Part shown: positions 21,269 through 24,200 of the stretch, in pieces
Numbering within the stretch: the first letter of the stretch is position 1
Layout of the letters: each line of letters opens with the position of its first letter
Source of the DNA: Perna viridis
Lineage: Eukaryota
Assembly (NCBI GenBank): GCA_037379345.1
Contig: CM074519.1
Location: forward strand, 39,086,103 to 39,150,102
DNA length: 64,000 nucleotides
Reading direction: 5' to 3'
Position numbers and translations under genes: made by a program
The notes under the pieces: model-generated
Database searches by the model: none
Told to the model about the DNA's origin: nothing
What the model saw: only the letters and a program-made list of their open reading frames with translations

Positions 21269-24200
21269 ATGACATTGTCTGCTAGGAGGATAGCTATTCT
21301 GTTAGCACTGGCAATATTCAAGTTGTCGGAGCAATGTAGTCCTCCAGGCCCTCCGTTCGTCGCACATCCTCAGAATTTTTTTTGTGATGCAAAGTATCGT
21401 AAGTAAAAAAGTATAGTGTTAATTTTCTTCATTTTATATTCATGCTGATTTCAAATTAGGAATTTGACGACCAATATACTTTTGTTTTAATGATAAAGAA
21501 GCTCGAGTTTTGTTCATGTAAACACGTAGAATTATCATTTCATTGCGACTTTCTTCTTTATTATTTTCACATAAAAGTTTATATTCAACAAAAGGAAAGA
21601 GCACAGACAGATTGAATGAAATTGAGTGTATTTGCGGCATTATTTGTTTAGATATTTGAAGCAAGGGTAAAAACAAAATTGCCTAACTGATAAACTTAAG
21701 GCAATGTTTAAAAGCAAAAGAAATAAAGGAAGAGTTGTATAACAAATGGCAATATCAAGGGAAAGCGGAAGTTGGAAAATACCGCAATGGTCATATTTTG
21801 ATACAAGTATTTTCGATGGAAAAGGTGGGTTTAACAAGGTTTTATAGCACGTTTACCCCCGCTTCAATTTAGGTTAAAAAGTTTCGGTTTATAAAGATTG
21901 AACGGGCAGAAAACAATTGCTTCGGGTCAAAATTGGTAAAATAAGTAGTCAAAAACAGTACAGAAGATATAAACAACAAATAAGTGACAATAAAAAAAGT
22001 ATTTTATTTTTTTACAGGTTCATTTTCTGTAATATCATAATTAATAGAACAATATTTAATCAGTGTAACTGTACCACCTTTGGAAGCAAAATTTATTTTG
22101 CCAAATTATACAAACATTTTTTTCTAACAATTACATGTTCTTATGAATATATCTCGCTTTCTTTATAACTTTTCTTCAAAAGTAGGACTTGACAAAAAGT
22201 CTCTGTGTTTGGACCAGGTGCATTGTATGGGTAAATGTCTCTTGATTTTGTTTGTTTGTTGGGGTTTAACGTCCGAGCAGCAATATTTCAACTATATTCA
22301 GACGATGAACATGAAATTGATAATAAAATGAACATGAAATAAAAATGAGATGGAACACAAGGACAATGGGGTATACAAATTTTGATTGCCACTGCAAATA
22401 GGGAGAGATGGGTAGGGTCGGGCAATTTAGCCTCCTGTGGCGGAGCCCTGTGGTTCCTACTCCGGGAGAATACCACAGTAGGGTTCTTTAACGTGCGAGG
22501 AACGTGGCATCTTTCCCAACACGGTGCACCACTATGGTTTGTGGTCAGGTTTTCCGTATTATAGCCTGACAACCCCAGCATGTAACACGCCAGGGGTACC
22601 CCATTCCACCACCTGGGGCACACATCCCAGTTGCTCTGTGGGCAGAGCGCCCTAGCCCCCGATTAAGGTTCTGAGCACTATTTGATCGCCTTTTACGACA
22701 AGCTTAGCGCTGCTGCAGGCCTATTCTTTTGACATCCGGCCCTGCACGGGTCTTGAAGAATGTTTTGAATTCTTTAATAGCACCTCCTTATCATTTTGTA
22801 GGGTAACGAAAACTTACGGGTATGAGTCTTTTATAAATTTATGAAAAATAATCTTTTTATAAAATCGTTGACTATTTGAAAGAGCAATCAAGTAACCAAG
22901 ATTCTAGCGGCAATCAAAAGAATGAAATCCAGGGACAAAGACTAGACATAGAAAACAGACAAACACAACAAAGAATATAAAATAACCAAAATAATACATT
23001 AAGTAACAAAAGTTAATGAGCAACTCGGACCACTAAAAACTGGGAGCATGGATCATGCGTACCGGTAGGGAGTTAGTGTCCTCTGCTTTTCTAGAAACAC
23101 CGCCGAGTCAAGTCTGGGAAAGACAAAAGAGGAAGGGAAAATTATTACACGTTGAACAAATTGTGCATTAATGAAAAGACTTGCAGACAAATCAATTCAA
23201 AATTGGTGATCAATCTTATGTTATGACATGTGTATAAGCACTTCTCTTTTGCTAAATGTGCAAAATAATTTTTTTCGTATCATTTTCAGTTATGGTCGGT
23301 AATGTTCTAAGCTCTAAGGTCGGGACCATCTACACAATATACAGAATCAGAGTATTAGCTGTTATAAATGTAAATTACATGTCAAACAATTTACACTATA
23401 CGCCAGAATATACCATCTGCGCTATGTTTTAATATCTTTCATAGACGAACAAACGATATTGTGTTAGTTTCGAGGAACGATACTCTCGCTAAAATGTCAA
23501 AGCAGGGTGAAGGAAAAACGAAAATTTAGAAAACAACGTGATGTGTCAAGAGTAGTAACAACAAAAATATTTTGACAAATAAAAACTTAAGTATTTATAC
23601 ACAGACCAACATGCTCTGATTTTACAGGTTAAACATAAATAAGTATTATCATTTTACCGAAATTGATATACACATTAAAGCAATAAGAGTCTAGAGGATA
23701 ACACGTTTTAAAAACAAGTGTTTATACAAAGATATTATTTTTGTCATATGGAAACAATAATATGGTCCTATCATGCTCGTTTACCATGTGTTGTAAACCA
23801 TATGATTCTCATATATGACACATGTAACTTTGTCTGTATAGTAAGAGTGTATATAGTAATATTGAATATGCAACATGTTTTACTTATTCATACAAGTCTT
23901 AATGATGACGTTTTATACCAAAAGGGATTCACAAACTCAGATGTCGGAAAAGTTAAAAGTATATATACCCCAAGTAGTGGTGCAGCATGCGGAACAACAT
24001 TTCGTATAGGGATCACTTACGCCTTTGGAGGTAACTATAATTTGGTGGTTCTGGTAAAGAAAGATATCACATGTTACTCCTTTGCTGCAAACCTTTATTC
24101 AATATATTTAAGTGGTAATGATAGAAATAAGTTAAGTTTGCGATATGCAACTGATGAGTTCAAAATGGATTATTTAATCATTTCTTTAGAAATACTTGAC

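What the first reader, a model, noticed from the sequence alone, without database searches (positions are those of the whole stretch)
21335..21398. Collagen-like Pro/Gly insertion at the inhibitory N-terminus, variable between paralogs
Seen: mature N-termini are CSPPGPPFVAHPQ (B1), CSIPPPYILYPQ (B2), CGIPGPPWVGHPQ (B3), CSPPGPDYVFHPQ (B5) and CGFPGPPFVIHPQ (B6). They are 3-4 residues longer than type A CSCFPQHPQ. Established: TIMP residues 1-4 lie in the protease cleft, residue 2 enters S1', and Gly at position 2 weakens MMP inhibition while sparing ADAM17 inhibition in TIMP-3. Inference: a rigid polyproline PGPP segment may replace the lost disulfide and mimic collagen Gly-Pro-Pro, acting as a decoy for collagenolytic enzymes, including microbial ones. 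Variation at positions 2-3 and after the prolines could give a panel of specificities.
Basis: partly seen in the sequence, partly recalled or inferred. Interest (0 to 1): 0.75.

Follow-up and report, generated by a model that had tools for sequence, protein, structure and literature searches.

The report
Proline-rich N-terminus in divergent TIMP genes
A tandem family of expressed protease-inhibitor-like (TIMP-like) genes has lost one conserved disulfide and gained a short proline-rich stretch at the end that normally plugs the protease; this is a real new variant of a known family, but the idea that it mimics collagen is untested.

Summary
The sequences are as reported. Five exon 1s in a tandem TIMP-like cluster encode, after a signal-like peptide, Cys-x-x-Pro-(Gly)-Pro-Pro N-termini, 3-4 residues longer than two Cys-x-Cys neighbours. 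B1 is transcribed and spliced as modelled, and the finding ends on the exon 1 donor. Type B lost Cys3 and its partner together: 10 versus 12 Cys.

The picture is wider than reported. In a ~160-kb cluster, 13 of 15 exon 1s lack Cys3 and 9 of those 13 read Cys-x-Pro. Type B is the longest form. Pro4 and Pro6 are kept through saturated synonymous change. Residues 2-10 change somewhat faster (pN 0.34 versus 0.19-0.29), without dN>dS. B3 and B4 are broken.

'Collagen-like' means at most two Gly-X-Y triplets, and B2 has none. All four intact B genes have Glu/Gln at -1, so a free Cys1 is unproven.

My reading is a remodelled reactive ridge with altered, probably non-MMP, selectivity. The decoy idea is untested. 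Protein libraries gave no relatives and no paper holds the motifs.

The parts
21269..21334 (+). B1 signal-like peptide (22 codons), ending Ser-Glu-Gln before Cys1
   Evidence: It starts at the first ATG after an in-frame stop. The RNA contig X3 record 22 starts upstream at 21154. The cleavage site was not tested.
21335..21398 (+). The finding: B1 Cys1 to the end of exon 1, reading CSPPGPPFVAHPQNFFCDAKY plus the first base of a split codon
   Evidence: The exon end at 21398 is fixed by the GT..AG joint 21398>23290 in X1, X2 and X3, which is absent from DNA run X14.
23290..23369 (+). B1 exon 2
   Evidence: Joints 21398>23290 and 23369>23925.
23925..24030 (+). B1 exon 3, carrying the 'SSGAAC' ridge and the partner cysteine of Cys1
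   Evidence: Joint 24028>24508 with cut +2. The exon 3 profile matches only TIMP-2 chains, at residues 63-79.
24510..24649 (+). B1 exon 4. It has no cysteine at the position of type A 'SSCG' and ends in Cys-Arg-Cys
   Evidence: Joints; alignment A5.
25536..25670 (+). B1 exon 5: short C-terminal domain with 5 Cys, plus the stop codon
   Evidence: Joint 24648>25535 with cut +1.
28428..31646 (+). B2 gene (5 exons). N-terminus CSIPPPYILYPQ at 28488; Ser-Glu-Glu before Cys1; intron 4 has a GC donor
   Evidence: Exon borders are set by homology to B1 and were not checked with RNA.
33515..37762 (+). B3: exon 1 is intact (CGIPGPPWVGHPQ at 33581, Gly at -1), but exon 3 (about 34860-34960) is broken, so B3 is a probable pseudogene
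44255..45736 (+). B4 pseudogene: exons 2, 3 and 4 only, with stops in exons 3 and 4
48739..53939 (+). B5 gene. N-terminus CSPPGPDYVFHPQ at 48805; Ser-Glu-Glu before Cys1
57622..62197 (+). B6 gene. N-terminus CGFPGPPFVIHPQ at 57688; Ser-Glu-Glu before Cys1
4143..7046 (+). A1 gene, the canonical comparison. N-terminus CSCFPQHPQ at 4209; 'SSCG' in exon 4 (6214-6354); 12 Cys
   Evidence: The Pfam TIMP model matches its exon 1 at E 9e-4, which is below the cut-off.
15081..20099 (+). A2 gene, canonical. N-terminus CSCFPQHPQ at 15147; 'NSCG' in exon 4 (19171-19311)

Best explanation
Type B genes encode secreted, two-domain TIMP-fold proteins with a remodelled reactive ridge. The Cys3 disulfide was lost as a pair. 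The stretch between residue 3 and the HPQ anchor was lengthened by 2-3 residues relative to the other Cys3-less copies (3-4 relative to type A) and is held stiff by conserved prolines (Pro4, Pro6, mostly Pro7). By homology this arm lies along the primed subsites (S2' and beyond) of a bound metalloprotease. The likely effect is a change of target range, away from classical MMPs and towards enzymes that accept Pro or small residues at P1'-P3'. The variable positions 2, 3, 5, 7, 8 and 10 would tune this between copies. Shown here: the sequences, the paired cysteine loss, splicing and transcription of B1, purifying selection on the prolines, and kinship with TIMPs at exons 1, 3 and 4. Inferred: the position of the arm in a complex, its stiffness, and any inhibition.
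For: Sequences and length difference. Paired loss: no Cys3, and no Cys at the 'SSCG' / 'NLCG' column, giving 10 versus 12 Cys. B1 is expressed and spliced at 4 of 4 modelled introns in 3 of 3 probable RNA runs from two studies, and at 0 of 4 in the DNA run. The inhibitor-side features are kept: Cys1, HPQ, the next Cys, and the 'IYTPSS.AACG.TL' ridge, which is the most TIMP-like part (the exon 3 profile hits 4 of 4 TIMP-2 chains at residues 63-79, best E 9.7e-4). Pro4 and Pro6 are invariant with differing codons while pS is 0.55-0.66. Whole mature dN/dS is 0.19-0.25. Residues 2-10 have pN 0.338 against 0.19-0.29 in the other mature segments. Cys1 coordinates zinc, residue 2 enters S1' and residue 4 enters S3'; small changes at the N-terminus switch N-TIMP-3 from MMPs to ADAM17/ADAMTS (PMC3003256 passages and section 18).
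Against: No binding, activity or structure data exist. The spliced protein was not assembled, so there is no whole-protein HMM score, signal-peptide prediction or fold. Exon by exon, no B1 exon matches Pfam TIMP. The exon 4 and exon 5 profiles find no TIMP in the PDB. The -1 residue is Glu/Gln in all four intact B genes, whereas it is Gly in 9 and Cys in 1 of the other 10 exon 1s that have a signal-like peptide. By the recalled -3/-1 rule this makes cleavage right before Cys1 doubtful, and an acidic two-residue extension made N-TIMP-3 a poor inhibitor of everything tested. Synonymous sites are saturated, so the selection estimates are rough. No orthologue could be examined.
Confidence: 0.4

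Rival explanations
1. Type B proteins are no longer protease inhibitors. They would be TIMP-fold matrix or binding proteins (for byssus, shell, ligament or connective tissue), and the Pro-rich N-terminus would be a surface or linker feature.
For: Glu/Gln at -1 in 4 of 4 intact B genes suggests a blocked or extended N-terminus. Extensions abolish MMP inhibition. One of the two disulfides that tie down the reactive N-terminal segment (Cys3 to Cys100) is lost (PMC9409782 passages). The whole cluster scores below Pfam's TIMP cut-off exon by exon. There are precedents. Scallop byssal Sbp8-1 is an atypical TIMP that showed no inhibition in the one assay reported (PMC5975577 abstract and passages). 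Tensilin is a TIMP-like protein that binds collagen fibrils (cited in PMC4807446 passages). 'Pseudo TIMPs' with changed N-termini are reported in bivalves (PMC10755359 passages).
Against: Cys1, HPQ and the AAC ridge next to the partner cysteine are the best-conserved parts of the protein. That pattern is expected if the wedge still docks into a protease. Overall dN/dS of 0.19-0.25 shows constraint but does not say what kind.
Confidence: 0.3
2. This is the reader's idea: the PGPP arm imitates a collagen chain, so the protein acts as a decoy inhibitor of collagen-degrading enzymes, including microbial ones.
For: Counting Cys1 as P1, B3 and B6 read Gly2-x-Pro4-Gly5-Pro6-Pro7. That is two Gly-X-Y triplets starting at P1'. 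B1 and B5 have Ser2-Pro3-Pro4-Gly5-Pro6. This register is the one I recall for bacterial collagenases that cut before Gly; that point is recalled and not checked here. The prolines are conserved.
Against: There are at most two triplets and no capacity for a triple helix. B2 has no Gly, and B3 is probably a pseudogene. The shorter Cys3-less relatives share the Pro-rich start without a Gly-X-Y register, so the prolines predate any collagen likeness. There is no dN>dS. As far as I recall, TIMPs are not known to inhibit bacterial collagenases. No assay was possible.
Confidence: 0.1
3. The extension is a tolerated loop-length change without a function of its own. Once the Cys3 disulfide was gone, the segment was free to vary in length, and prolines merely keep it from disturbing the fold.
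For: Length varies stepwise across the cluster: 6 residues before HPQ in type A, 7 in six copies, and 9 to 10 in D2 and type B. Residues 2-10 are the most variable mature segment (pN 0.338). There is a Gly indel in B2 and an Ala10Val allele in run X1.
Against: Pro4 and Pro6 are invariant and Gly5 and Pro7 are kept in 4 of 5 copies despite saturated synonymous change. dN/dS for residues 2-10 is about 0.16-0.32, not near 1.
Confidence: 0.2

Closest known systems
Canonical TIMPs (vertebrate TIMP-1 to -4; Pfam PF00965)
   Same: Both have a signal peptide followed at once by Cys, an HPQ motif, the next Cys four residues on, and an 'IYT..S.A.CG..L.VG' ridge. These align with TIMP-2 residues 1-15 and 63-79. 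Both have two domains, a Cys-rich C-terminal part, and a five-exon gene.
   Different: Type B has no Cys3 and no partner cysteine (10 Cys, not 12). It has 3-4 extra Pro-rich residues before HPQ and Glu/Gln at -1. Its exons score below the Pfam cut-off.
Expanded bivalve TIMP repertoires and 'pseudo TIMPs' (Ma et al. 2023, PMC10755359; outline and passages seen)
   Same: Both show tandem duplication of many TIMP genes, copies that fail a standard NTR domain test, and 'N-terminal structural changes'.
   Different: The main text of the paper does not contain the words cysteine, disulfide, CXC or proline, so the paired Cys loss and the Pro-rich arm are not described there.
[quoted passage not shown] 2010, PMC3003256; passages and section 18 seen)
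   Same: Small changes at residue 2 or in front of Cys1 remove MMP inhibition while keeping ADAM17/ADAMTS inhibition. Natural B3 and B6 have Gly2, and B2, B5 and B6 may carry Glu-Glu in front of Cys1.
   Different: Those are engineered human proteins that keep Cys3 and have no insertion.
Cnidarian TIMP homologues without Cys-X-Cys (Nicosia et al. 2016, PMC4860685; passages seen)
   Same: These are TIMP-family members that lack the Cys-X-Cys motif. [quoted passage not shown]
   Different: The paper says those proteins lack Cys1 itself, and set them aside. Here Cys1 is kept and only Cys3 and its partner are gone.
Non-inhibitory TIMP-like matrix proteins: scallop Sbp8-1 (PMC5975577) and sea cucumber tensilin (cited in PMC4807446)
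   Same: The TIMP fold is recruited to structural or collagen-binding roles in marine invertebrates.
   Different: Sbp8-1 keeps the 12 conserved Cys and adds two more. No Pro-rich N-terminal arm is described.

Membership tests
TIMP (Pfam PF00965, MEROPS I35) | The whole protein scores over the Pfam gathering cut-off | tested here: not met
   Tested exon by exon only. Across the eight peptides scanned (five B1, three A1), the only TIMP match is A1 exon 1 at 19.5 bits against a cut-off of 23.1. The family search of the genome hits the cluster only at A1 exon 1 (E 0.74). The spliced protein was not assembled, so the proper whole-protein test is open.
TIMP (Pfam PF00965, MEROPS I35) | Cys as the first residue after the signal peptide (free alpha-amino group) | tested here: inconclusive
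   Cys follows a signal-like peptide in 5 of 5 B exon 1s. Cleavage was not tested. The -1 residue is Glu/Gln in the four intact genes.
TIMP (Pfam PF00965, MEROPS I35) | Cys1-X-Cys3 motif | tested here: not met
   Residue 3 is Pro, Ile or Phe in type B. Type A has Cys-Ser-Cys.
TIMP (Pfam PF00965, MEROPS I35) | Twelve conserved Cys (six disulfides) | tested here: not met
   Type B has 2+0+1+2+5 = 10 over exons 1-5. Type A has 3+0+1+3+5 = 12.
TIMP (Pfam PF00965, MEROPS I35) | HPQ motif followed by the Cys13 equivalent | tested here: met
   H/Y-P-Q-N-x-F-C is present in 5 of 5 copies. The profile aligns to residues 1-15 of TIMP-1/-2 chains (4 of 4 hits), though at a weak E of 3.4-9.2, and to N-terminal exons of canonical TIMP genes of this genome (E 0.003 and 0.016 in a small database).
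TIMP (Pfam PF00965, MEROPS I35) | Ridge before the partner cysteine of Cys1 (the Cys70/72 region) | tested here: met
   The exon 3 profile hits 4 of 4 TIMP-2 chains at residues 63-79, best E 9.7e-4. It also hits the matching exon of a canonical TIMP gene at E 1.4e-6.
TIMP (Pfam PF00965, MEROPS I35) | Inhibits metzincin proteases 1:1 | not testable with these tools
   This needs protein and assays.
Collagen / collagen-like proteins | A long uninterrupted run of Gly-X-Y triplets able to form a triple helix | tested here: not met
   The copies have at most two triplets (B3, B6), one Gly-Pro-Pro in B1, Gly-Pro-Asp in B5, and none in B2.
'Pseudo TIMP' in the sense of Ma et al. 2023 | Pfam, PANTHER and PROSITE TIMP/NTR matches but no SMART NTR match | not testable with these tools
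   Those scans need the whole protein and libraries not on hand.

The most novel reading that the evidence does not exclude
Replacing Cys3 by Pro is a retargeting device. With Cys1 on the zinc, 9 of the 13 Cys3-less N-termini of this cluster present Pro at P2', and 6 of those 9 have a small residue (Ser or Gly) at P1'. That is the primed-side preference reported for all five astacin-family proteases profiled in PMC3186203 (small P1' in crayfish astacin and LAST). On this reading the cluster would be the first natural TIMP-fold inhibitors aimed at astacins or other Pro-P2' metalloproteases, which classical TIMPs are not known to inhibit (recalled). The longer type B arm (Gly-X-Y register) would extend the mimicry to collagen-cutting members.
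Probability: 0.12. Interest if true: 0.8.

Novelty: new variant of a known kind. Interest (0 to 1): 0.5.

Why it matters
The Cys1-X-Cys3 start is treated as the hallmark of TIMPs and as essential for inhibition (PMC9409782 and PMC4860685 passages). This cluster shows a whole expressed radiation that dropped Cys3 and its partner, kept Cys1 and the neighbouring ridge, and then varied the length and make-up of the arm that lies in the primed side of the cleft. If these proteins still inhibit, they are natural experiments in how to change TIMP selectivity, which protein engineers attempt by mutating the same residues. If they do not inhibit, they show how an inhibitor fold is turned to another use. 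Either outcome is testable with a few recombinant proteins.

Tried and rejected
Relatives elsewhere. A profile of type B exon 4 (A1) was scored against 1.84 billion representative proteins. It gave 1 hit (E 1.2e-4), a repeat protein of 559 residues that is unrelated. A word-based search with the B1 exon 3 stretch found no candidate. An ESM Atlas look-up of exon 4 gave no usable hit. These libraries appear not to hold this genome's proteins, because even B1 itself was not found. The blanks therefore say nothing about orthologues in related animals. No tool here holds other animal genomes, so conservation across species stayed untested.

PDB profiles of exon 4 (2 unrelated weak hits) and exon 5 (0 hits) did not find TIMPs. 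Only exons 1 and 3 did.

Site-wise selection tests were not attempted. There are only four intact paralogs and synonymous sites are saturated. The Nei-Gojobori counts given here are rough.

Signal-peptide cleavage could not be predicted, because no predictor is on hand and I do not trust a weight matrix from memory. Only the -3/-1 residues are reported.

I looked for exon 1 of a minus-strand B-like gene (C9:39170165-39172267) and did not find it.

The neighbour-joining sketch of the cluster rests on about 80 aligned columns from two exons and has no support values. I use it only for the grouping of B copies.

Literature. A text search for six N-terminal motifs found 0 papers. The searches found no description of a Cys3-less, Pro-rich bivalve TIMP.

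The joined step was left out.
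Full report
WHAT IS THERE. The window is AT-rich animal DNA with GT-AG introns. It lies on contig C9 of a 723-Mb genome. A six-frame scan for 'Cys ... Pro-Gln ... Cys' gave 9 matches. Seven of them are first exons of TIMP-like genes, all on the + strand. Two (A1 at 4209, A2 at 15147) start Cys-Ser-Cys-Phe-Pro-Gln-His-Pro-Gln. In the alignment of the seven N-termini, type A has a 4-column gap against B1, B3, B5 and B6, and B2 has a 1-column gap. 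The stated interval 21335-21398 runs from the Cys1 codon to the last base of exon 1.

GENE MODELS AND EXPRESSION. All-against-all comparison of open frames, followed by tblastn, mapped five exon families. Contigs of three runs that are probably RNA (X1 from one study; X2 and X3 from another) were laid on B1. They show GT..AG joints at 21398>23290, 23369>23925, 24028>24508 (cut +2) and 24648>25535 (cut +1). That is 4 of 4 modelled introns in 3 of 3 runs. The DNA run X14 shows none of them. One 743-base contig (X3, record 22) spans 21154-25685 across all five exons. B1 is therefore transcribed and spliced as modelled. The runs carry no library description, so the tissue is unknown. The X1 contig differs at 21363 (C>T), which changes Ala10 to Val inside the arm. 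Its four other coding differences are synonymous by my reading of the codons. B2, B5 and B6 have the same five exons with conserved splice contexts. B2 intron 4 appears to use a GC donor. B3 exon 3 carries indels of +1, -3 and -4 bases and has stops in both usable frames. B4 has only exons 2-4, with stops. Four type B genes in the window therefore look intact.

THE LOST DISULFIDE. Counted exon by exon, type B has 2+0+1+2+5 = 10 cysteines after the signal peptide. Type A has 3+0+1+3+5 = 12. In the exon 4 alignment, type A has 'SSCG' or 'NSCG'. Two short Cys3-less copies have 'ISLG' and 'LSVG' there. Type B has no cysteine at that position. The same column is 'NLCG' in a canonical TIMP gene of this genome. 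In TIMPs, Cys1 and Cys3 are bonded to Cys70 and Cys100 (PMC9409782 passages).

THE WIDER CLUSTER. A profile of type B exon 4 found 25 matches in the genome at E up to 1. Eighteen of them lie on C9 between 39.10 and 39.25 Mb. I fetched the flanks and mapped the exons. Outside the window there are eight more first exons, and none has Cys3:
- One is a seventh B copy that is broken (CGPPPLYSDHPQ; no signal peptide, and a stop in exon 4).
- One is on the other strand and has a 9-residue start (CSPPFGYFYHPQ).
- Six have 7-residue starts: CRPGFPIHPQ, CRPAYPIHPQ, CRPSYPIHPQ, CSFAPPSHPQ, CYPVYPRHPQ and CSPIFPIHMQ.
So 13 of 15 first exons of the cluster lack Cys3, and 9 of those 13 have Pro at position 3. 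A rough neighbour-joining sketch from exons 3 and 4 groups the B copies. The two minus-strand genes come next, then the short forms (no support values). The 'insertion' is therefore the last step of a series (6, 7, 9, then 9-10 residues before HPQ), not a single change from type A. Genes that pass Pfam's TIMP cut-off lie elsewhere in the genome (C1 and C15). One of them starts with a Cys-x-Cys motif before Arg-His-Pro-Gln.

IS IT A TIMP? Exon by exon the evidence is mixed, and I report it as such. The Pfam TIMP model matches only A1 exon 1, below its cut-off, and no B1 exon. A profile of exon 3 (A plus B) finds only TIMP-2 chains in the PDB: 4 of 4 hits at residues 63-79, best E 9.7e-4. A profile of the N-termini finds only TIMP-1/-2 chains at residues 1-15, but at E 3.4-9.2. 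Profiles of exon 4 and exon 5 find no TIMP. I also scored the profiles against six-frame pieces of nine loci, elsewhere in this genome, that the Pfam TIMP model had hit (six of them over its cut-off). Exon 3 hit L053 at E 1.4e-6 and exon 4 hit the next exon of the same gene at E 0.0022. Exon 1 hit L055 and L054 at E 0.003 and 0.016, and exon 5 reached only 0.12 (the database is small). Together with the shared five-exon plan and the position beside type A, this makes type B a divergent TIMP-family member that fails two classical hallmarks (Cys-X-Cys and 12 Cys). The whole-protein test was not run, because the spliced model was to be left unjoined.

SELECTION. The four intact paralogs are old. 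Pairwise pS is 0.55-0.66 (dS about 1.0-1.6), and dN/dS over the mature protein is 0.19-0.25. Residues 2-10 have pN 0.338, against 0.19-0.29 in the other mature segments. Their dN/dS is about 0.16, or 0.32 when B3 is included. Pro4 and Pro6 are invariant in 5 of 5 copies with differing codons. Gly5 and Pro7 are each kept in 4 of 5. The arm is therefore constrained at its prolines and freer than average elsewhere. Nothing points to positive selection, although saturated sites and four sequences give the test little power.

THE N-TERMINUS MAY NOT BE FREE. The residue before Cys1 is Gly in A1, A2, B3 and six flank copies, and Cys in one flank copy. It is Gln in B1 and Glu in B2, B5 and B6, always in the context Ser-Glu-(Glu/Gln)-Cys. 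Note s1-781963 raised this point for B2. By the -3/-1 rule for signal peptidase (recalled, not computed), Glu at -1 is unusual. In N-TIMP-3, blocking or extending the N-terminus removes MMP inhibition. One or two extra alanines still allow ADAM17/ADAMTS inhibition. A Met-Glu extension gives Ki above 1000 nM on three MMPs and 327-529 nM on ADAM17, ADAMTS-4 and ADAMTS-5 (PMC3003256). This is the main weakness of any inhibitor reading.

COLLAGEN LIKENESS. With Cys1 counted as P1, B3 and B6 read Gly-x-Pro-Gly-Pro-Pro from P1' on. B1 and B5 read Ser-Pro-Pro-Gly-Pro-(Pro/Asp). B2 has no Gly. That is at most two triplets, far short of a collagen domain, and the shorter relatives are Pro-rich without that register. 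The likeness could matter only as a local substrate-like sequence. An alternative of the same kind fits more copies. All five astacin-family proteases profiled by Becker-Pauly et al. prefer Pro at P2'. Crayfish astacin and LAST prefer Gly, Ser or Ala at P1' (PMC3186203 passages). Cys-(Ser/Gly)-Pro matches this.

VERDICT. My best reading, at 0.4, is a remodelled reactive ridge that changes target range away from MMPs. Loss of inhibitor function stands at 0.3, neutral loop growth at 0.2, and the collagen decoy at 0.1. No paper found or 65 describes this N-terminus. The closest is the 'pseudo TIMP' class of PMC10755359, whose supplements I could not open.

Noticed in passing
window 22242-23100 (B1 intron 1); related pieces at 495-942, 5840-6015, 9986-10231, 25849-26387, 46800-47009, 60243-61241: This is a very high-copy interspersed repeat. 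Summed contig depth reaches millions in DNA run X14, against about 110 for the flanks. It is also abundant in the probable RNA runs.
   Followed up: no
window 26327-27224: A tandem-repeat block lies between B1 and B2, seen as repeated open frames on both strands.
   Followed up: no
window 12122-12226: An orphan exon-5-like piece of the B kind sits between A1 and A2. It is cut short by a stop before the last two cysteines and is probably a relic of a lost copy.
   Followed up: partly
window 30258 (B2 intron 4 donor): The donor reads GCAAGT where the other copies have GTAAA, so this is a likely GC-AG intron. It was not checked with RNA.
   Followed up: no
window 21326-21334, 28479-28487, 48796-48804, 57679-57687: Ser-Glu-(Glu/Gln) directly precedes Cys1 in all four intact type B genes. 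Nine other cluster members have Gly there. Cleavage before Cys1 is therefore doubtful.
   Followed up: partly
G000:C9:39150103-39245000 (loci L038-L047): The cluster runs about 95 kb past the window end. It contains eight more Cys3-less first exons, six of them with a short Cys-x-Pro/Phe start, and two genes on the opposite strand.
   Followed up: partly
L050-L055 (G000 C15:14.76 Mb, C1:19.47 Mb, C1:31.05 Mb): Canonical TIMP exons that pass Pfam's cut-off lie on other contigs. The C9 cluster is thus a separate, much more divergent clade.
   Followed up: partly
window 21363: The spliced contig of run X1 has C>T here (Ala10Val in the B1 arm), plus four synonymous differences. It is an allele, or a strain difference, at one of the variable arm positions.
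   Followed up: no
window 32450-32592, 33801-33961, 51843-51985, 61485-61623: There are four runs of N, left untouched. Two lie inside introns of B3 and B5, and one lies just upstream of B6 exon 4.
   Followed up: no
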